Below are positions 623-12,229 of a stretch of 64,000 nucleotides of DNA, one piece after another (within the stretch, counting starts at the first letter, position 1; every line of letters starts with the position of its first letter). The stretch covers positions 310,001 to 374,000 of IMG/VR virus record IMGVR_UViG_3300027985_000918; one strand, written 5' to 3'. The notes beneath the pieces were generated by a model. That model was not told the DNA's origin. It saw nothing but the letters and a program-made list of their open reading frames with translations, and did not search any database. The translations under genes were made by a program, and so were the position numbers.

Positions 623-1591
623 ATGGCACTGCCACCCCACCTCCAAAAGTTCATGGACACCCCCATCCCCGTGCTCGATGACGGCCACGTTCAGCTTGTG
701 GACGTGATGGGGGACGACATGACCATCGTGAATGCTGCCCGGGTCAGCTACGGCGCCGGGACCAAACGGGTCTCTCAGGACCGGCACCTCATCCGGTACC
801 TCATGCGGCACCGGCATACCACCCCCTTAGAAATGTGCTCGATCACCTTCCGTGTTAGAGTCCCGATGGACACCTGGCGGCAGTGGATCCGGCATCGCAC
901 GGCGTCCGTGAACGAGTACAGCACCCGCTACTCCGAGGCCATCGGCAGTGCCCAGCATGTCACCGAGTGGCGTGCTCAGGCTACCAACAACAAACAAGGG
1001 TCCTCGGGGGTCATCACCGAATGGCCTACCGACGACGTGGGCGTCGGAACCTCCTGGCACGAGCAGTTCCCAGGCACAGACAACTACGAGAACCCCGGCC
1101 AGTACCTCTCCGAACGGGAGGCCGCCCTGCACAAGCTGGCCCGTGAGGTATACGAAGAGCGCCTGGCTTTCGGCGTCTCCCGGGAGGTGGCCCGCAAAGA
1201 CCTGCCGCTGAGCACCTACACTGAAGCGTGGTGGAAGATGGACCTCCACAACCTCTTCCACTTCCTCCGCCTCCGTTTGGACCCCCATGCCCAGCAGGAG
1301 ATCCGGGAGTACGCCAGTGCCATCGCCCAGATTGTGCAGTCGTGGGTGCCTTGGGCTTGGGAGGCATTCGAGGACTACCAGCTCAACGGCCTGTACCTCA
1401 CCCGCTTCGAGGTGGCAGGTCTGAAGGCCCTGCTTTCCGAGCTGGGCAACCTGTCGGGCGGTGATACCGAGGCTGCCACCCTCATGGCGCTCAAAGGTTC
1501 GGGTCTGCCCAAGGGCCGGGAGAAGCAGGAGTTCCAGGATAAACTGGTCAAACTCCTGCCCTGTGTCAGACGTGTTTCAACGAGTACCTGA
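623..1591 (+). CDS. thyX: Flavin-dependent thymidylate synthase ThyX
   Basis: AARVSY, HxTPLE, ThyX signature RHRTASVNEYSTRY, REVARKDLP, LRLDPHAQQEIR. Confidence 0.97.
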   Translation: MALPPHLQKFMDTPIPVLDDGHVQLVDVMGDDMTIVNAARVSYGAGTKRVSQDRHLIRYLMRHRHTTPLEMCSITFRVRVPMDTWRQWIRHRTASVNEYSTRYSEAIGSAQHVTEWRAQATNNKQGSSGVITEWPTDDVGVGTSWHEQFPGTDNYENPGQYLSEREAALHKLAREVYEERLAFGVSREVARKDLPLSTYTEAWWKMDLHNLFHFLRLRLDPHAQQEIREYASAIAQIVQSWVPWAWEAFEDYQLNGLYLTRFEVAGLKALLSELGNLSGGDTEAATLMALKGSGLPKGREKQEFQDKLVKLLPCVRRVSTST

Positions 1592-2717: not shown

Positions 2718-2741
2718 TGCTCCAGCAACATGGAGGAACAT

Positions 2742-3698
2742 ATGCGCCTGGAGAAGATTGGTTTCTACACACTAAGCGACAGCCGAGCCCACTCGGCCTC
2801 GGAAACCTCCCCCTTGATGCGCTGTGAGCTACTGCTCACGGATGCCTGCAATTTCCGATGCCCCTATTGCCGGGGCCTTAAGCCGGACCAGAAGGGCACC
2901 CTCCCTCTGAATCAGGCGATGTACACGGTGCAACTCTGGTGTGACCAGGGGCTCCAGAACGTCCGCTTCTCGGGAGGAGAGCCAACCCTGTACAAGGGTC
3001 TCCCGGAATTGGTCTCCTACTGCAAGACCCGAGGGGTCAATCGAATCGCCGTCTCCACGAACGGCTCCATGCCCCTCCAGCTCTACAAGGGGCTGATCCG
3101 GGCTGGAGTCAACGACTTCTCCATCTCCCTGGATGGGGGCTGCTGCGCTGTGGGCGACGAGATGTCCGGTGGTGTCACCGGCTCCTGGAGCCGAGTGGTT
3201 GAGAACATCCGGCAGATCTCCAAGCTCACCTATGTGACGGTAGGCATGGTCTTCACCGAGGCCAACGTAGAGCAGTGCGTCGAAGCGGTCATGTTCGCAC
3301 GCAGTCTAGGGGTGTCCGATGTGCGAGTCATCCCCTCAGCCCAGTTCAACCAGGCCCTGACGAAACTGGCAGATCTGCCGTCCGAAACCCTGGACACCTT
3401 GCCCATTCTAAAGTACCGCATCCAAAACCTACGGGAGGGACGCCACGTCCGGGGGTTTGACGACCACCCGAAGTGCTGGCTGGCCCTCGACGACATGGCG
3501 GTAGTCCAGGACAAGCACTACCCCTGCATCATTCACCTTCGTGAGGGCGGAGCCCCCATCGGGACAGTCGGCCCTAACATGAGGACGGAGAGAGCCCTCT
3601 GGGTCAGGAACCACGATCCCCACTCCGACCCTATCTGCCGGGCGAACTGCTTGGACGTGTGCCTCGACTACAACCGCAAAGCGGGGGAGGGGCGATGA
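2742..3698 (+). CDS. Radical SAM enzyme
   Basis: CNFRCPYC (CxxxCxxC), FSGGEPTL, STNG, ISLDG; Cys-rich C-terminus. GGAGG RBS before the ATG at 2742. Confidence 0.93.
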   Translation: MRLEKIGFYTLSDSRAHSASETSPLMRCELLLTDACNFRCPYCRGLKPDQKGTLPLNQAMYTVQLWCDQGLQNVRFSGGEPTLYKGLPELVSYCKTRGVNRIAVSTNGSMPLQLYKGLIRAGVNDFSISLDGGCCAVGDEMSGGVTGSWSRVVENIRQISKLTYVTVGMVFTEANVEQCVEAVMFARSLGVSDVRVIPSAQFNQALTKLADLPSETLDTLPILKYRIQNLREGRHVRGFDDHPKCWLALDDMAVVQDKHYPCIIHLREGGAPIGTVGPNMRTERALWVRNHDPHSDPICRANCLDVCLDYNRKAGEGR

Positions 3699-5989: not shown

Positions 5990-6946
5990 CTACCGGGGAA
6001 TCGAGACAACCCTGCCTGAAGTCTTCCTGGCCTGATACTCTTCGATGGCCTCCACGATGGCTGCTACCAGAGGATGCCGAACCACGTCCCGGGTTCCAAA
6101 CTCATGCACCCCGATTCCGGGGATATGGGACAGAACGCTCACCATCTCGGACAGCCCCGAAGACTTCCTTTCCAAATCGACCTGGGTCACATCCCCCGTC
6201 ACGATGCACCGGCTATCCTCCCCCAGGCGGGTCAGAAGCATAGTGAGCTGCTGCCAGGTGCAGTTCTGAGCCTCATCTAGCAGAACGAACGCATTGGAGA
6301 GGGTGCGTCCCCGCATGTAAGCCAGAGGAGCGATCTCGATTTTGCCTTCCTTCTTCAGGCGATCTACCCGGGCTTTGCCCATGAGGGTGTTGAGAGCATC
6401 GAACAGCGGCTGAAGGTACGGGTTCACCTTCTCATCAAATGTCCCCGGCAGGAAGCCCAGACTCTCGCCGGCCTCAACTGCCGGGCGGGTAAGGATGATC
6501 CTCTCCACCTCACCAGTGAGGAACGCATGAATGGCGGCGGCCACCGCCAAGTACGTCTTTCCGGTACCCGCAGGACCGATGCCGAAAACGATGTCATGGT
6601 CCCCGATCTTCTCCAGATACTCGGACTGTCCCTCCGTCTTCGGTTCGACGTTGCTGTAGGTGATGGGCTTCCGGCTGCTACGCTTCTTCATGTAGGCATC
6701 CATCATTGCGGAGCTAGTCGAGTGGCCCTGGTGTGCCTTCAGACTAATGAAGTTCACCAGATCCGTGACGTACTCCAGGTCATGCTCGGAGCGAGCGTTC
6801 AGCACGAGCTTCTTGGACTGAACCCGTATGCGGGTGCCAAGCCGCTGGAGAAAACGAATCGTGGCCCAGTCTGTCCCACAGAACAGGGCCAGTACGGACT
6901 CGTCCTGGAATTTGAATACACGCTTGAAGGGGAAAGGTTCGTTCAT
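5990..6946 (-). CDS. phoH: PhoH family ATPase
   Basis: [55 protein letters not shown]. Confidence 0.97.
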
Positions 6947-7062: not shown

Positions 7063-9552
7063 TCATGCCGCTTTGCGATCCACCGTGAAGTGTTCCCCCG
7101 TGACGTACACGGTCAGCAGCAGCCCGTTGCCCAGGGGGAAGAAGGTACCCTCCTCCTTCTCCGCCTTGGCGAGCTTGATGTCCGGGAAATCCTGGGAGAT
7201 CTGCTCCGCCGTCCGGGCCGATGTGGTGAAGCTCTCCGGGAGGAGGCCGGTGGCCCCAACGTAGAACACCAAGGGGCAAACCTTCTGCTGGTAGATGTCC
7301 GAGATCGCCCGGTCCACCCTCTTCAGCGTCTCCGCCAGCACCTCAACCTGCTGATCCCGATCGGCCACCGGCTCCCGGATGGCGAACATGAACGCCTTCC
7401 GGTCGTCGTAGTCGAGCCCAGCCTCCTGGAGCACGTCGAGGATGTGGCCGTTGTCCTCCAGGCCGAGGAAATCGGCGTAGATGGGGTAAGCCAGGGCGTC
7501 CACGGCATCGAGCTTCGTGCGAGACGAGAGCTGCTTGATTCCCCAGATGTTGTTCTTCCCCAGCCACATGTCGAGAGTGGGCTTTTCCACCTTCTCCCGC
7601 TTGTCATCCTGGAGGCTCCCGTCTCCGCCTCGAACCAGAGTGAATCTCCTCTGGAGGTAGGCGTTGCCAGAGGCGAGCTTACCGAGGTTCGTGATCTCGG
7701 CCGTACCCACCTCGACCCTGTAGGACAGGCGAGTGTCCACCTCTCCCTTGGCGATGGCCTCTTGGAGGTCAGTGTAGGGCACCGTCGAGGGCGGGGAGAA
7801 GTACAGGGAAGGGGTCAGATGGTACTGCCCCAGCTCTGCGATCTGGTCCCCCGTCAAGCTGGTGGAGCTGGACTTGAGGACCCCCGACAGGATCTTGCTC
7901 AGGACCGTGAACTTCGCCAGCTTGTCGAAGGTGCTGGGCTGGATGTCGAACTCCTGGCTGAAGTCCACCAGCGGCAGGTTCGCCATGTCAATCACCAGCA
8001 TGGCCGCCGGGTCGAACTCCCCGTCCACCACCCCCAAGGCCTTCAGTGCCCGGAAGGCCCTCTTGTCGGAGGTCTGGATCGGGAGCTTGGTCGTAGTGAC
8101 CTCCCCGTCCCCGATGAGGGTGTAGTTGCGGAAGTCTTTGAGATCTAGAGGGATGCCGGCCACCTTCTCGATGATGGTGCCGGTCTTCTTCTCCACCAGG
8201 TTCACATCCCGGACGAGGCGGATGTTGGCCGTGGCCGTGTTCCGGTTGATCTCCACCGCCGACACCTGGACGAACCCGTCCTTGCCGTTCTTCGGGTGAA
8301 CATCGTACTTCGGCTCCGTGACCGTACCATCCTCGTTGCGGACCCCGGCGACACGCTTGATGCCCCGGCGCTTGTAGTTCTCCATCATCGTCGGGACGTG
8401 AACCCGGATATGGCTGCGGTACTCGTCAATGGTCTGGAGGACCGACAGTGCTGTCGGTCCTTCGAGAGAGAGGCCGTAATTGCCATCCCATCTCCGGGAC
8501 GTGCCCGGGAGACGATTGAAGAGGGACTGCTCCACCCCCTCGGCCATGGAAGCCACTGCGGTGGCCGTGAGAGCCCTGTAGTGAGCCTTCAGGAGGTCGT
8601 CGTCCCTGGCGGAGACCAGGGCGTACTTGGCGACGTTGAAGTTGCCCTCGGAGATGGCAGCACGGGCGTAGGCCAAAGCCAGATCTTCTGGGGCATCCTT
8701 CTCGATGGCCTCGTACTGTTCCTGGGTGATCCCGAACAGCCGGTAGACGGTGGCGTCATCGCTCGCCGAAAGCCCACAGACGTTGATGGTTTCGGTCGTC
8801 CCGAGGACCTTCCTGCCGCTCTTGCTGACGAAGATGCCGTAGTCTGCGTCCCCCAAGTCCAGCTCAATCGTCGGGCTCATGCTGCCCGTCAGAAGCTGCT
8901 GAGTGTCGTAGAACGCCTGGTAGACCTGCTTGATGCTCTTGGCCTGGATGCAGGTACCCGAGAGCTGGTTGGCGATGCCTGCCAGGAGGTTGAAGTCGGA
9001 CCAGTCTCGGTAGGCGACCGTGTTGACGAACACGTTGGGGTGAGCCTTGAGCTGGCCCACGGCCTCCTGAATGGCCTTGTTCTCTCGGCTGGGAGAGCGG
9101 TCGTTGGCGTACCCGTCCGAGTGCAGGGAGATACATGTGATCTCCCCATCGCTGATCAGCTTCTCCGCCGCCGAGAGTCCCTGGCTGATACAGGTGAGCC
9201 CACGGACCTGAAGGTTGCGGATCTCTCGGATCTGGGGAGAGTCCACGCCCATCACATCCTCGATGGGGGTCCGCTCGAAGTGAACCCGCACGTCCCCCAT
9301 CGAACTGTACGTGATGAGGCTAACCTTCAACCCTGGGTTGTTGAACTCGTCGAGAGTCAGCACCTTCTCTACGGTAGCCTTGAGATCCCTGAGATCATGG
9401 TACATGGATCCGGACACATCGAAGACGAAAATGTGGTGGCTGGGGGATGATGCCGGAGCCGACTTCGACGTGTCTTTGACCTCGGTCTCGACACGGTAGA
9501 ATTCGACAGGCTCTCCCTTGAAGTTCCGAAGGGCGAATCGGGTCTGACTCAT
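7063..9552 (-). CDS. Large vWA (MIDAS) domain protein
   Basis: HIFVFDVSGSM (DxSxS), GLTCIS, LHSDGY; 829 aa; GGAG RBS. Confidence 0.88.
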   Translation of the reverse strand: MSQTRFALRNFKGEPVEFYRVETEVKDTSKSAPASSPSHHIFVFDVSGSMYHDLRDLKATVEKVLTLDEFNNPGLKVSLITYSSMGDVRVHFERTPIEDVMGVDSPQIREIRNLQVRGLTCISQGLSAAEKLISDGEITCISLHSDGYANDRSPSRENKAIQEAVGQLKAHPNVFVNTVAYRDWSDFNLLAGIANQLSGTCIQAKSIKQVYQAFYDTQQLLTGSMSPTIELDLGDADYGIFVSKSGRKVLGTTETINVCGLSASDDATVYRLFGITQEQYEAIEKDAPEDLALAYARAAISEGNFNVAKYALVSARDDDLLKAHYRALTATAVASMAEGVEQSLFNRLPGTSRRWDGNYGLSLEGPTALSVLQTIDEYRSHIRVHVPTMMENYKRRGIKRVAGVRNEDGTVTEPKYDVHPKNGKDGFVQVSAVEINRNTATANIRLVRDVNLVEKKTGTIIEKVAGIPLDLKDFRNYTLIGDGEVTTTKLPIQTSDKRAFRALKALGVVDGEFDPAAMLVIDMANLPLVDFSQEFDIQPSTFDKLAKFTVLSKILSGVLKSSSTSLTGDQIAELGQYHLTPSLYFSPPSTVPYTDLQEAIAKGEVDTRLSYRVEVGTAEITNLGKLASGNAYLQRRFTLVRGGDGSLQDDKREKVEKPTLDMWLGKNNIWGIKQLSSRTKLDAVDALAYPIYADFLGLEDNGHILDVLQEAGLDYDDRKAFMFAIREPVADRDQQVEVLAETLKRVDRAISDIYQQKVCPLVFYVGATGLLPESFTTSARTAEQISQDFPDIKLAKAEKEEGTFFPLGNGLLLTVYVTGEHFTVDRKAA

Positions 9553-9586: not shown

Positions 9587-9612
9587 TTACCCTTTTTTCA
9601 AATTTGGTTACC
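9587..9612 (-). promoter_or_regulatory. Putative class-II promoter (divergent pair, leftward)
   Basis: Minus strand GGTAAC-N16-GTAA, upstream of the vWA gene. Confidence 0.6.
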
Positions 9613-9617
9613 CCCTA

Positions 9618-9644
9618 GGTAACAACTCTCACATTGAGGGGTAG
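9618..9644 (+). promoter_or_regulatory. Putative class-II promoter (divergent pair, rightward)
   Basis: GGTAAC-N17-GTAG, upstream of 9674. Confidence 0.6.
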
Positions 9645-9673
9645 GGGAACCGCACCCCTAAGGAGGAAAAGAG

Positions 9674-10033
9674 ATGATCAACTTGACTATGCACAAGGCC
9701 ACCCCAGATCAGAGTGAAGCAGGAGTGACCGACCTTCCAGCCGAAAAGGTCGAGAAGGTCAAGTGCCTCCTCAACTTCCAGAATCTCCCCACATCGGAAG
9801 ATGTGGAAGAGAGAGCCGCTCGGCTGGCGGAGCTGGCAGCAGAAGAAGGGGCAACCTCTGCCATGATCGGGGGGGCTCCCTTCCTCATGGCACCCCTCGC
9901 ACAGCATCTGAAGCAGAGCCACATCACGCCCTTCTTCGCCTTCTCCCGACGGGAGGTCGTCGAAGGTGAGGGGGTGAACGGTGAGGTCGTGAAAACCAGC
10001 GTGTTCCGGCACGCCGGTTTTGTGGCAGCCTAG
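9674..10033 (+). CDS. Small Rossmann-like protein resembling Csx20/Csx15 (candidate ring nuclease)
   Basis: NLTMHKATPDQ, AMIGGAP, FAFSRRE...GEVVKTSVFRHAGF resemble Csx20-type motifs; strong AGGAGG RBS. Confidence 0.55.
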   Translation: MINLTMHKATPDQSEAGVTDLPAEKVEKVKCLLNFQNLPTSEDVEERAARLAELAAEEGATSAMIGGAPFLMAPLAQHLKQSHITPFFAFSRREVVEGEGVNGEVVKTSVFRHAGFVAA

Positions 10034-10066: not shown

Positions 10067-11203
10067 TTGGACAAAAACACCACCCTAATGCGCCTGCTCT
10101 CCCGTTTCTGTGTGGATCACGAGGTTGGAGATCACACCTACGTTGTCGGCGGAGCCGTCCGGGACTTCTTGCTGGGGCGCCCTATCAAAGACGTGGACGT
10201 GGTCACGGACACCGTCAACGGAGGGCTGACCAGCGAGCTGCTGGCCCAGAGTCTGGCCCAGCAGTTCCAGGGATCTACCATCGTGACCAACAACTACGGG
10301 GTCGCCATCCTCACCCTGAGAGGCTGCGTCTACGAGGGGGTATGCCTAGACGGGATGGTCGTCGAAATTGCCAACGCCCGGAAAGAGTCCTATGGGGGGA
10401 AGACCGGAAAAGGCTACAAGCCTCACATGGTCGAACCGGCCTCCATTCAGGAGGATGTGGTCCGACGGGAGTTCCGGTTCAACACCCTCCTATGGAGGAT
10501 GGCCGACATCCAAGAAGGGCCGGTGGCGGCAAGAGTTCTTGACCTGACCGGCATGGGCCTGACGGACATCCGAGAGGGACAGATGGTGTGCCCGACGGAC
10601 CCCAACAAGGTGTTCACCGACGACCCCACTCGGATGCTCAGGGCGGTCAAGTTCGGCCTACGGCTCGGGTTCAACCTGGGGAGCCTGGAACTGGCCTGCA
10701 TCCAAACCCACGCCAGGGCGCTGCTGAACGTCCCCCCGAATGCGGTGGCAGTCATCCTGCTGAACGACATCTTCGGGGTGGACGTCCGGGAAGGTCTGAG
10801 GATGCTGGAACACATGGAGCTGCTTCCCGTGGTGAGAGAGATGGCGGATACCAACCCAGCCTTTCGCACCACCCTGACCCACTGGGCACGGCCCCGGGTC
10901 CATGCCATGCTGGATCTGGTCGAGGTGGGCCGCCTCCCCGTATCCGGGGGTCTGGAGATCATGCTGGGGGAGGAAGGAATGGGGAAGCTACGGCTCGCCG
11001 TTCATGAAATGGACGACCCGATGGCTCTGAGATTCGTCGAGGCGCTTCGCCAGCCGGGAAAGGTGATGGACACCCAAAAGGTGGCCATGCAGAGAGGCCT
11101 CACGGGGGCTCGGATGGGGGAGATCACGGTGGAAGCCCGGAACCTCCTACTGGAATCACCCAGCCTGTTCCGAGAGGGTCTCACGCAGGCGATGCTCCGG
11201 TGA
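10067..11203 (+). CDS. Class II tRNA nucleotidyltransferase (CCA-adding / poly(A) polymerase family)
   Basis: YVVGGAVRDFLLGRPIKDVDV, ARKESY, DVVRREFRFN, DDPTRMLRAVKF. Confidence 0.9.
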   Translation: MDKNTTLMRLLSRFCVDHEVGDHTYVVGGAVRDFLLGRPIKDVDVVTDTVNGGLTSELLAQSLAQQFQGSTIVTNNYGVAILTLRGCVYEGVCLDGMVVEIANARKESYGGKTGKGYKPHMVEPASIQEDVVRREFRFNTLLWRMADIQEGPVAARVLDLTGMGLTDIREGQMVCPTDPNKVFTDDPTRMLRAVKFGLRLGFNLGSLELACIQTHARALLNVPPNAVAVILLNDIFGVDVREGLRMLEHMELLPVVREMADTNPAFRTTLTHWARPRVHAMLDLVEVGRLPVSGGLEIMLGEEGMGKLRLAVHEMDDPMALRFVEALRQPGKVMDTQKVAMQRGLTGARMGEITVEARNLLLESPSLFREGLTQAMLR

Positions 11204-11849
11204 GTCGAGGGTCTTCCGGACCCTCGACTCGCTGGACAACCACCCCATGCTTTTCCAAGTACGACACCCCGTTCTCCCCAGCGTAGCCCCCCTCCACGAT
11301 GTACACACCCTTGATCCCAGCATGGTGGATCAGCTTCGAGCACATCATGCAGGGCTCTCCCGTCACAATGAGCCAAGCCCCCGCCGTTGCCACCCCTGCG
11401 GCTGCGGCGTTGCAAATGACATTCATCTCAGCGTGGTGGCAACCGATCTCCACCCGGGTCCCCGATTTGACACCGGGGTACTTGAAGGCCAGCTCTTGCC
11501 GGAACTCTTCCGCAGCTTCGGAGTTGCCGAAACTGAACTCCTGGTCCATCCCCCCGGGGGCCCATCCCCTAAGACGGCCCGTCGGGATGTGCTCAACGAG
11601 CCATTCCATAGGAGGATTCGAGACCGGGACCACCCTGGTATCCTTCAGAGGATAGCCGTCCCTCTCGCAGAAATGACCCCCACACAAGGGGCCGTCGGCC
11701 CCCCGAGGACCACCGTTGTAGCCGTCCATGAGGATGACGTTCCGCTTGATGTCGAGCAGAAAAGCGCCGAACTTCCTCCGGGGACAGTTACTGGCCTTGG
11801 CCAGAGAAAGGCACTGCTCAATGCGGATGGCAAGGTGCTTGGGGTTCAT
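11181..11849 (-). CDS. dCMP deaminase
   Basis: SNCPRRKFGA, GYNG, HAEMN, PCMMC zinc motifs. Confidence 0.93.
   Translation of the reverse strand: MNPKHLAIRIEQCLSLAKASNCPRRKFGAFLLDIKRNVILMDGYNGGPRGADGPLCGGHFCERDGYPLKDTRVVPVSNPPMEWLVEHIPTGRLRGWAPGGMDQEFSFGNSEAAEEFRQELAFKYPGVKSGTRVEIGCHHAEMNVICNAAAAGVATAGAWLIVTGEPCMMCSKLIHHAGIKGVYIVEGGYAGENGVSYLEKHGVVVQRVEGPEDPRLTGASPA
11202..11230. terminator. Perfect 12-bp hairpin at the junction of convergent genes
   Basis: GAGTCGAGGGTC-ttccg-GACCCTCGACTC; no U-tract. Confidence 0.45.
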
Positions 11850-11878: not shown

Positions 11879-12229
11879 CTACCGACGGCCCTCAGTGGCT
11901 TCTACCACCTGCCAAGGCTCGGCCCCTGACAACGAACAGAGGGGCTCCCTTTGAAGGGAAGGGGTCTCCAGCAGGCCATCACACCGCTCGTTCAGGATGA
12001 ACAGAACCTCTTGGATGTCGATGTTGTGGGCTTTGAGCATTGAGAGCAGGACGAACAGTACGTCCCCCGCCTCTGCAGCAGGAGACGAGTCTCCCTTTCC
12101 CCGCAAAGATTCAATGAACTCAGAGACTTCGAGGTGGAGATAGCAACCCCCGTTGCTCCAGTTACGCTCCCACCGATGGTGGATGCAGACGGAGATACAC
12201 TTCTCGGCCACTTCCTCAACAGTTAGCAT
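11879..12229 (-). CDS. MazG-like nucleotide pyrophosphohydrolase
   Basis: LHLEVSEFIE...EAGDVLFVLL all-alpha NTP-PPase motif; GGAGG RBS. Confidence 0.75.
   Translation of the reverse strand: MLTVEEVAEKCISVCIHHRWERNWSNGGCYLHLEVSEFIESLRGKGDSSPAAEAGDVLFVLLSMLKAHNIDIQEVLFILNERCDGLLETPSLQREPLCSLSGAEPWQVVEATEGRR

What the first reader, a model, noticed from the sequence alone, without database searches (positions are those of the whole stretch)
9674..10033. Csx20/Csx15-like protein outside any CRISPR locus: candidate phage ring nuclease (anti-type III CRISPR)
Seen: a 119-aa protein with N-terminal NxxxHxxTPDQ, central hhhGG and C-terminal FAFSRRE...GxVxKTSVFRHxxF. From my recollection of the families, Csx20 ends in YAxxxR...KxSxFxHxxF, and Csx15/16/20 are linked to cyclic oligoadenylate degradation. 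No cas genes are present, and the gene has a strong RBS and a class-II promoter. Inference: an anti-CRISPR ring nuclease unrelated to AcrIII-1 (DUF1874).
Basis: partly seen in the sequence, partly recalled or inferred. Interest (0 to 1): 0.7.

Follow-up and report, generated by a model that had tools for sequence, protein, structure and literature searches.

The report
Phage-borne Csx20-like ring nuclease candidate
A 119-residue gene in a 402-kb phage genome is a real but distant relative of the CRISPR ring nuclease Csx20, from a large, mostly viral sister branch, so it probably destroys the cyclic-oligoadenylate alarm signal of type III CRISPR, an idea already in print but untested for this branch.

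Summary
The ORF at 9674-10033 (+) exists as described, with every quoted motif and a rare AAGGAGG ribosome-binding site. It also has a copy of a phage-specific bipartite promoter motif, AGGTAAC-N16/17-GTAG (40 copies in the genome; control heptamers give 0-2).

It is a true Csx20-family homologue:
- NCBIfam CAS_Csx20 matches full length at E 1e-7, 32 bits, below the 70-bit equivalog cut-off.
- It carries the same precomputed Pfam family, PF27247 (MJ1673), as named Csx20 proteins.
- hhalign against 32 locus-type Csx20 sequences gives 97.7% probability, E 1.5e-12.
- H7, Q13, R93 and H113 are invariant in both groups.
- The AF2 model has pLDDT 95.7 and matches 'CRISPR-associated'/Csx16 fold clusters.
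- A symmetric homodimer model passes its controls.

It is not an orthologue of the CRISPR-locus protein. It sits in a deep sister clade (2,671 clusters at 50% identity match the clade profile at E <= 0.001) found mostly in phages. That clade gives 180 IMG/VR contigs, against 2 for the CRISPR type. It also occurs in CPR/DPANN chromosomes.

The 402-kb phage has no Cas10 and no CRISPR array.

Best reading: a dimeric cA4 ring nuclease used as counter-defence. Phage csx20 homologues were already reported as candidate anti-CRISPRs (2025, 2026), so this is a new member of a known kind. No Csx15 link was found.

The parts
9617..9644 (+). Phage-specific promoter-like bipartite motif AGGTAAC-N17-GTAG. 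AGGTAAC begins 57 nt upstream of the ATG.
   Evidence: The motif occurs 40 times in the 402-kb genome, all with 16/17-nt spacers, against 0-2 for control heptamers. 25 copies are co-oriented and <= 160 nt upstream of called genes. In the window there are 2 matches against 0.02 expected.
9660..9666 (+). Shine-Dalgarno sequence AAGGAGG, 7 nt before the start codon.
   Evidence: Read directly from the sequence. The full heptamer is found before only 9 of 387 called genes.
9674..10033 (+). Csx20-like (PF27247/MJ1673 family) gene, 119 aa. Candidate homodimeric cyclic-oligoadenylate ring nuclease.
10067..11203 (+). tRNA nucleotidyltransferase (CCA-adding type), 33 nt downstream on the same strand. 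Probably co-transcribed with the Csx20-like gene (inferred).
   Evidence: Pfam PolyA_pol head domain E 3.7e-16 and PHROG tRNA nucleotidyltransferase E 3e-24. The only terminator-like hairpin, at 9999-10014, lies inside the Csx20-like CDS and is weak.

Best explanation
The gene encodes a small CARF-like (derived Rossmann) protein of the Csx20/MJ1673 family. The proposed mechanism has three steps, each inferred from homology:
1. It forms a symmetric homodimer.
2. The dimer binds cyclic tetra-adenylate (cA4), and perhaps cA3.
3. It cuts the ring without metal, using the family-invariant His/Arg/His set (H7, R93, H113, with Q13).

The gene is carried by a 402-kb phage that has no CRISPR-Cas of its own. 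It is expressed from a phage-specific promoter. In the host cell it would drain the cA4 made by Cas10, so that cA4-activated effectors (Csx1/Csm6, Can1/2 and the like) stay off. That makes it an anti-type III CRISPR ring nuclease, working like AcrIII-1 on a different scaffold.

Shown here: family membership by homology, the fold, a dimer model that passes its controls, the phage context, and the absence of cas genes. Inferred: substrate, cleavage, and the anti-CRISPR role.
For: **Homology to Csx20**
- NF040559 CAS_Csx20 is the only family hit: E 1.1e-7, residues 1-116 against model positions 1-121 of 124.
- 33 of 34 clade members hit the same model.
- hhalign of the clade (A1) against 32 homologues of a Csx20 taken from a type III-D locus (A2): 97.7% probability, E 1.5e-12, 115 columns.
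- The reference Csx20 (157 bits) sits beside a CRISPR array, a TM1812 CARF gene, Cas10, Csx10, Csx7 and Csx19.
- Both groups carry PF27247.

**Conserved residues**
- H7, Q13, a Gly of the central motif, R93/R98, F111/F116 and H113/H118 are invariant in both alignments and pair up in the hhalign alignment.

**Structure**
- AF2 model pLDDT 95.7.
- AlphaFold DB cluster hits named 'CRISPR-associated protein' and 'Csx16', E 4e-7 to 3e-4, TM up to 0.73.
- Homodimer model: score 0.60, best control 0.00. That mark was reached by 20 of 30 proteins solved as pairs of one chain and by 1 of 23 proteins solved as single chains. The three runs agree in 100% of contacts, and partner pLDDT is >= 90.
- The interface uses the conserved IGGAP and AFS segments.

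**Published biochemistry**
- A CRISPR-associated Csx20 degrades cA4, and cA3 at high enzyme concentration (PMC12409355).

**Counter-defence context**
- The clade is overwhelmingly viral: 180 IMG/VR contigs against 2 for CRISPR-type Csx20.
- The nearest ESM Atlas clusters are 81-82% viral.
- The csx20-aca14 anti-defence operon of Pasteurella (PMC13551039) is of the window type, as shown by the Pm86 remnant followed by an RHH ORF.
- One clade member lies in a type III locus, in frame with a WYL regulator.
- In this phage the same promoter class drives RtcB, a Macro domain protein, two PARP-like ADP-ribosyltransferases and an HD_4 hydrolase.
- The gene sits just upstream of a CCA-adding enzyme.
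Against: - No member of this viral clade has been assayed in any paper I could find in the library. The clade is separated from CRISPR-locus Csx20 by a very long branch (about 9 substitutions per column, SH-aLRT 100). It scores 32 bits against a 70-bit equivalog cut-off.
- K107, N3 and T5 are invariant in the clade but not in Csx20. Y93 and the QGDFG motif of Csx20 are replaced. Substrate or chemistry may therefore differ.
- Many members sit in CPR/DPANN chromosomes among housekeeping genes (NusA, RNase Y, ClpP, pyrophosphatase, and a TrmB-like regulator). Those genomes give no Cas10 match; overall 38 of 50 host genomes have none. That does not fit a purely anti-CRISPR or CRISPR-regulating job.
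- No Aca-type regulator lies beside the gene in the window.
- The host, and whether it carries type III CRISPR, is unknown.
Confidence: 0.6

Rival explanations
1. It binds cyclic oligoadenylate but acts mainly as a sponge or a very slow nuclease, as reported for Csx15. It would sequester the signal rather than destroy it.
For: It has the same fold class and a dimeric pocket. Csx15 is a good cA4 sponge and a very slow ring nuclease (PMC13148439). Phage sponges are a known strategy against other signalling defences.
Against: The polar residues invariant across both clades (H7, R93, H113) look catalytic rather than merely binding. The Csx20 that was characterised turns over a 100-fold substrate excess. 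The Csx15 paper argues that sponging suits type III poorly, because much signal is made.
Confidence: 0.12
2. The viral/CPR clade has moved to another nucleotide substrate. Candidates are cA3 or other CBASS-type signals, cA6, or a housekeeping cyclic or 2',3'-cyclic-phosphate nucleotide. It would then counter a different defence, or serve nucleotide or RNA-end metabolism.
For: - A deep split from Csx20, with clade-specific invariant residues N3, T5 and K107.
- Chromosomal copies among housekeeping genes in CPR/DPANN genomes that have no Cas10 match.
- Csx20 already shows minor cA3 activity.
- In this phage the gene sits just upstream of a CCA-adding enzyme, and RtcB shares its promoter class.
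Against: The core invariant residues and the dimer geometry are kept. One clade member is embedded in a type III locus. Another sits in an acr operon next to an AcrIF6 homologue.
Confidence: 0.2
3. It is a ligand-sensing or regulatory module with no enzymatic role. For example, it could be a small CARF-like sensor that partners with another phage protein.
For: CARF-like domains often act as sensors. Tandem repeats and longer ORFs containing the domain exist. One copy lies in frame with a WYL-WCX regulator.
Against: Most members, including this one, are stand-alone proteins of about 120 aa with no effector or DNA-binding part. The extra regions in long ORFs carry no recognisable domain. No conserved partner gene is found across phage loci.
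Confidence: 0.06

Closest known systems
Csx20 (NCBIfam NF040559; Pfam PF27247 'MJ1673'), a CRISPR-associated cA4 ring nuclease
   Same: - Same Pfam family (precomputed).
- Full-length profile-profile homology (97.7%).
- Same size, about 120 aa.
- Shared invariant residues: His7, Gln13, Arg93/98, Phe111/116 and His113/118.
- CARF-like alpha/beta fold and a predicted symmetric dimer.

   Different: - Scores 32 bits against the 70-bit equivalog cut-off.
- Deep sister clade.
- The central motif is IGGAPFLM instead of VQGDFGA.
- Clade-specific N3, T5 and K107.
- Not encoded beside cas genes; found in phages and CPR/DPANN chromosomes.
- Activity untested.
Phage 'csx20 homologues' in anti-defence operons (the csx20-aca14 operon of Pasteurella multocida; PMC13551039) and the four phage Csx20 hits of PMC12409355
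   Same: The same viral clade. The Pasteurella phage Pm86 remnant carries the window-type motifs (GGAPFF, AFSQRE, K..IFKHAGW) and is followed by an RHH ORF. Rhodothermus phage RM378 gp002 is 42.5% identical to the window protein. The proposed role, counter-defence by ring cleavage, is the same.
   Different: The window gene has no Aca-type regulator next to it. It is driven by a phage-specific promoter in a 402-kb phage and sits just upstream of a CCA-adding enzyme. I could not see which four phages the 2025 paper listed, because the supplement is not held.
AcrIII-1 / Crn2 (DUF1874), a viral cA4 ring nuclease
   Same: The proposed job and logic are the same: a small, dimeric, metal-independent viral enzyme that destroys cA4 to disarm type III CRISPR (established knowledge).
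   Different: No sequence or fold match was found here. It uses a different scaffold.
Csx16 and Crn1 (CARF-type ring nucleases)
   Different: No sequence-level match. The Foldseek/VIA matches to solved Crn1 are not above background.

Membership tests
Csx20 (NCBIfam NF040559 equivalog) | Score at or above the curated 70-bit cut-off of the equivalog model | tested here: not met
   32.2 bits, E 1.1e-7, full length. All 33 clade members that match are also sub-threshold. A locus-borne Csx20 scores 157 bits.
Csx20/MJ1673 superfamily (Pfam PF27247) | Membership of the Pfam family, with full-length profile-profile homology to named Csx20 proteins | tested here: met
   Precomputed PF27247.1 is on the window protein, on all 91 homologues, and on proteins that NCBI names Csx20. 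hhalign 97.7%, E 1.5e-12, 115 columns. The local Pfam copy lacks this model.
Csx20/MJ1673 superfamily (Pfam PF27247) | Conserved polar residues of the putative cOA site (His after beta-1, Gln, Arg, C-terminal His) | tested here: met
   H7, Q13, R93 and H113 are invariant in the clade. They align with the invariant H7, Q13, R98 and H118 of Csx20.
Csx20/MJ1673 superfamily (Pfam PF27247) | CARF-like alpha/beta fold forming a symmetric homodimer | tested here: met
   AF2 pLDDT 95.7. AFDB clusters 'CRISPR-associated protein'/'Csx16', TM up to 0.73. Dimer score 0.60 against best control 0.00; the mark was reached by 20 of 30 proteins solved as pairs of one chain and 1 of 23 solved as single chains. 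PDB matches are non-discriminating.
Csx20 as a CRISPR-associated (cas accessory) gene | Encoded in or next to a type III CRISPR-Cas locus | tested here: not met
   No Cas10 and no array in the 402-kb phage. 38 of 50 cellular genomes carrying the clade have no Cas10 match. Arrays lie near only 1-3 of 142 loci. There is one exception, L030.
Ring nuclease (functional class) | Binds and cleaves cyclic oligoadenylate | not testable with these tools
   Shown only for a CRISPR-associated Csx20 in the literature.
Anti-CRISPR (functional class) | Phage-encoded, often in an acr-aca operon, and inhibits CRISPR immunity | tested here: inconclusive
   Phage-encoded: yes. No Aca-like neighbour in the window. 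A clade member lies in the Pasteurella csx20-aca14 operon. Inhibition is not testable here.
AcrIII-1 / Crn2 (DUF1874) | Match to the DUF1874 profile or fold | tested here: not met
   No Pfam hit at E <= 10 apart from a chance DUF7526 match. Absent from the listed matches to solved structures.
Csx15 | Sequence or profile similarity to Csx15 | tested here: inconclusive
   No family other than Csx20 is reported by NCBIfam at E <= 10, and none by Pfam. I did not confirm that a Csx15 model is in these libraries. No Csx15-named structure was matched.

The most novel reading that the evidence does not exclude
The window protein may represent a very large sister family of Csx20 (2,671 clusters at 50% identity match the clade profile at E <= 0.001). 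The family is essentially viral, and is also fixed in the chromosomes of CPR/DPANN episymbionts that lack Cas10. If its members are active, this could be the most widespread viral ring-nuclease family. AcrIII-1, for comparison, was found in 36 of 28,114 phage genomes. In this 402-kb phage the gene may belong to a co-regulated 'signal-and-damage' counter-defence set: the Csx20-like gene sits just upstream of a CCA-adding enzyme, and RtcB, a Macro domain protein and PARP-like enzymes share its promoter class. Alternatively, the clade has a new substrate.
Probability: 0.3. Interest if true: 0.65.

Novelty: new member of a known kind. Interest (0 to 1): 0.45.

Why it matters
Type III CRISPR defence depends on cA4-type signals, and phages that destroy the signal escape it. 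So far only AcrIII-1 is well established as a viral ring nuclease family.

If this clade is active, several things follow:
- A second scaffold, derived from Csx20, would be widely used by phages, including very large ones.
- It would be a compact tool for switching off cA4 signalling.
- Its presence in CPR/DPANN chromosomes without Cas10 would raise the question of whose signal those cells are degrading.

For this particular gene the value is mostly a secure annotation and a clear, cheap experiment. The concept itself is already published.

Tried and rejected
- **Local Pfam and PHROGs:** no useful hit. The family model PF27247 is newer than the local Pfam copy.
- **PDB by sequence profile:** nothing.
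- **Extra regions of long ORFs containing the domain:** no Pfam domain.
- **Sigma-70 promoter scan:** none.
- **Recurrence of the upstream GGTTACCCCCTAGG or the AT-rich stretch elsewhere in the genome:** none beyond chance. The real recurrent element is AGGTAAC-N16/17-GTAG.
- **Crude CRISPR-array scan of the phage genome:** its only hit was a 69-bp MORN-type coding repeat.
- **tblastn for aca14 homologues next to the other 142 loci:** none.
- **Supplement of PMC12409355 listing the phage Csx20 hits:** not held. PMC12730640 is not held either.
- **Contig numbering for Cas10 hits:** I first assumed that Cas10 hits in L018, L014 and L041 lay on the same contig as the gene. The contig numbers could not be mapped. 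L014 turned out to be a terminase-bearing (phage) contig. Only L030 is confirmed as lying near type III genes.
- **A 'conserved' antisense ORF over the gene in 40 loci:** this is a by-product of the conserved sense frame.

Full report
**1. Observation**

The window is bases 310,001-374,000 of a 402,383-bp IMG/VR virus record with direct terminal repeats.

It is a real gene:
- 91 homologues at E <= 1e-11 in the 5.8-billion-protein set.
- 2,671 representative clusters at E <= 1e-3, of which 962 are at <= 1e-30, in the exhaustive HMMER search.
- A family alignment with 15 invariant columns.
- An AlphaFold2 model with mean pLDDT 95.7.

The RBS AAGGAGG (9660-9666) is the strongest class in this genome, found before 9 of 387 called genes.

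No sigma-70-type promoter is present. The intergenic region does carry AGGTAAC-N17-GTAG at 9617-9644. This bipartite motif occurs 40 times in the genome, always with a 16- or 17-nt spacer, while six control heptamers followed by GTAG give 0-2. Twenty-five copies lie <= 160 nt upstream of, and co-oriented with, a called gene. In the window it occurs twice against 0.02 expected.

**2. What the protein is**

The local Pfam copy and PHROGs give nothing. NCBIfam gives a single hit, CAS_Csx20 (NF040559): E 1.1e-7, 32 bits, covering residues 1-116 against model positions 1-121 of 124, but below the 70-bit equivalog cut-off. Thirty-three of 34 homologues hit the same model, all below threshold.

To test homology properly I needed a Csx20 from a CRISPR locus. 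A Thermoanaerobacter genome that also carries a window-type copy has a 157-bit Csx20. That gene lies directly downstream of a CRISPR array and upstream of a TM1812-type CARF gene, Cas10, Csx10, Csx7 and Csx19, which is a type III-D locus. Its homologues include proteins that NCBI names 'CRISPR-associated protein Csx20'. They carry the same precomputed Pfam family, PF27247.1, as the window protein and all its relatives. The ESM Atlas gives the family name as MJ1673.

Profile-profile comparison of the two alignments gives 97.7% probability, E 1.5e-12, over 115 columns. In that alignment, residues invariant in the window clade pair with residues invariant in Csx20: H7-H7, Q13-Q13, R93-R98, F111-F116 and H113-H118. 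A glycine of the central motif is also shared.

On structure, AlphaFold DB fold clusters named 'CRISPR-associated protein' and 'CRISPR-associated protein Csx16' match at E 4e-7 to 3e-4, with TM up to 0.73. BFVD holds a near-identical viral fold at TM 0.96. Solved structures give only generic Rossmann-like matches; Crn1 Sso2081, SAVED and CARF chains appear at background level. No Csx20 structure is in the PDB by sequence.

A homodimer model passes its controls:
- Score 0.60 against a best control of 0.00.
- That mark was reached by 20 of 30 proteins solved as pairs of one chain, and by 1 of 23 proteins solved as single chains.
- The three runs agree in 100% of contacts, and partner pLDDT is >= 90.
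- The symmetric interface uses the conserved F35-P39, I65-F70 (the IGGAP motif), F88-R92 and C-terminal segments.

The invariant residues that are not in the interface are N3, L4, T5, H7, Q13, R93, K107, F111 and H113. These are the candidates for the ligand site. This is an inference, because I could not inspect coordinates.

**3. It is a sister clade, not the CRISPR-locus orthologue**

In a tree of 52 window-type and 32 Csx20 sequences, the two groups are split by one branch with SH-aLRT 100 and a length of about 9 substitutions per column. One caveat applies: both sets were gathered by similarity to their own query, so intermediates may exist.

The clade has its own signature: NLTQH-x2-T-x2-Q, IGGAPFLM, AFSRRE and K-x3-F-R-H-x-G-F. 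Csx20 proper has FSH-x-LT-x2-Q, VQGDFGA, YSTTKR and F-x-H-V-R-F.

Distribution:
- The clade's motifs find 180 IMG/VR contigs. The equally conserved Csx20 motif finds 2.
- The nearest ESM Atlas clusters are 81-82% viral.
- In the isolate phage collection, members are Rhodothermus phage RM378 gp002 (42.5% identity) and a truncated, unannotated copy in Pasteurella phage Pm86.
- Recurrent neighbours in phage loci are SNF2 helicase, SSB, terminase, portal, a DNA methylase and a ParB-like protein. None is a cas gene.
- Of 50 cellular genomes carrying the clade, 38 have no Cas10-like match, including every genome of 1.6 Mb or less, bar one marginal sub-threshold match in G034.
- A CRISPR array lies within 10 kb in only 1-3 of 142 loci.
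- The phage itself has no Cas10, no array and no paralogue.
- There is one clear exception. In a Synergistaceae MAG (L030) the domain follows, in frame and with its own RBS and GTG start, a WYL-WCX regulator a few kb from Csx7 and Cas10.

A second habitat is the chromosome of CPR/DPANN organisms (Saccharibacteria, Paceibacterota and others). There the gene lies beside a TrmB-like HTH gene, ClpP, RNase Y, NusA and pyrophosphatase.

**4. How it most likely works**

Csx20 from a CRISPR locus has been shown to degrade cA4 completely at 100-fold substrate excess, and cA3 at higher enzyme concentration. It was modelled as a dimer with a conserved face at the nucleotide site (PMC12409355). The window protein keeps the fold, a dimer model that passes its controls, and the invariant polar set. 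It is made by a phage that has no cOA signalling of its own as far as tested. The best explanation is therefore a dimeric, metal-independent cA4 ring nuclease used to blunt the host's type III CRISPR. Confidence is 0.6.

Context supports a counter-defence role:
- The published csx20-aca14 operon of Pasteurella multocida lies next to an AcrIF6 homologue (PMC13551039). It is of the window type, as the Pm86 remnant followed by an RHH ORF shows.
- In this phage the same promoter class drives RtcB RNA ligase, a Macro domain protein, two PARP-like ADP-ribosyltransferases, an HD_4 hydrolase, a vWA protein, DUF4419 and a radical SAM gene at window 2730-3698.
- The Csx20-like gene sits 33 nt upstream of a CCA-adding tRNA nucleotidyltransferase.

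A set that removes the signal and repairs RNA ends would make sense against cA4-activated HEPN RNases. That link is my inference only.

**5. Rivals**

- Sponge or very slow nuclease, as for Csx15 (0.12).
- Shifted substrate or a non-CRISPR role (0.2). The points in favour are the deep split, the clade-specific N3, T5 and K107, and above all the housekeeping-like CPR/DPANN copies without Cas10.
- Sensor or regulatory module (0.06).

Nothing links the protein to Csx15 or to DUF1874/AcrIII-1.

**6. Novelty**

Csx20 as a ring nuclease was established in 2025. The same paper found Csx20 in four of 28,114 phage genomes. A 2026 paper calls phage csx20 homologues a likely co-opted counter-defence gene. 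I found no assay of a viral-clade member in the library.

This gene is therefore a new member of a known kind. The less appreciated points are the size and viral bias of the clade, its presence in CPR/DPANN chromosomes, and its place in this large phage's promoter-defined gene set.

Interest 0.45.

Noticed in passing
window 9617-9644 and 2691-2717; 38 further copies elsewhere in the 402-kb genome, mostly between 5 and 162 kb (G000 coordinates): A phage-specific bipartite promoter-like motif, AGGTAAC-N16/17-GTAG, with 40 copies against 0-2 for controls. Genes behind it include RtcB, a Macro domain protein, two PARP-like ADP-ribosyltransferases, an HD_4 hydrolase, a vWA protein, DUF4419 and a radical SAM protein. 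The set has a host-takeover or counter-defence flavour. Timing and the polymerase or sigma factor that reads it are unknown.
   Followed up: partly
L012, L024, L028, L029, L037, L042, L043, L049, L062 and other CPR loci (gene at about 10001 or as listed): CPR/DPANN genomes (0.5-1.6 Mb) carry the Csx20-like gene in the chromosome. It lies next to a TrmB-like HTH gene and near ClpP, RNase Y, NusA and pyrophosphatase. None of these genomes gave a Cas10 match above threshold. It is unexplained why episymbionts without type III CRISPR keep a putative ring nuclease.
   Followed up: partly
L030:8660-10384 (+); Csx7 at L030:4543-5469; Cas10-like at L030:2-1573: In a Synergistaceae MAG, a WYL-WCX regulator ORF runs in frame, without a stop, into a complete window-type Csx20-like domain. 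That domain also has its own GAGGAGG RBS and GTG start. The ORF lies a few kb from type III genes. It is either a fusion or a tightly coupled gene pair.
   Followed up: partly
P0092-P0109: Proteins with two or three tandem Csx20-like domains (261-668 aa) exist. These could be covalent pseudo-dimers, which would fit a dimeric working unit. An ESM Atlas cluster of 740-aa Bacillota proteins combines PF27247 with PF27248 (MJ1674_2nd).
   Followed up: no
L146:309-509 and 484-699 (Pasteurella phage Pm86, MH238467.1, about 55.3-55.7 kb): An unannotated, N-terminally truncated Csx20-like ORF (66 aa) is followed by an unannotated 71-aa RHH ORF. This matches the csx20-aca14 arrangement published for P. 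multocida.
   Followed up: yes
G002 (Thermoanaerobacter sp. A7A): L145:5997-6368 and L031: One genome holds both a locus-borne Csx20 (157 bits, type III-D locus) and a window-type copy on a short separate contig. The two clades therefore coexist and are not simple replacements of each other.
   Followed up: partly
G000:C1, about 88,500-89,700 (outside the window): Arrays of 69-bp (23-aa) coding repeats of MORN type (..GxxHREDGPAxEWxxGxKEWW..). A crude CRISPR scan picked them up; they are not CRISPR.
   Followed up: yes
window 623-1591, 5990-6946, 7063-9552, 11181-11849, 11879-12229: The neighbourhood is an auxiliary-metabolism block: ThyX, PhoH, an 829-aa vWA protein transcribed divergently from the Csx20-like gene, dCMP deaminase and a MazG-like pyrophosphatase. 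A second vWA gene elsewhere in the genome has the same promoter class as the Csx20-like gene.
   Followed up: partly
window 9607-9623: The -35-like AGGTAAC element is the right arm of a short inverted repeat, GTTACC-N5-GGTAAC, which encloses a CCTAGG palindrome. It could be an operator or chance. It does not recur elsewhere in the genome.
   Followed up: partly
L134:12421-12760 (viral contig) and L056:5348-5547: Short regularly spaced repeats (6 and 3 copies) lie 2-5 kb from the Csx20-like gene. I did not inspect whether they are mini-CRISPR arrays or coding repeats.
   Followed up: no
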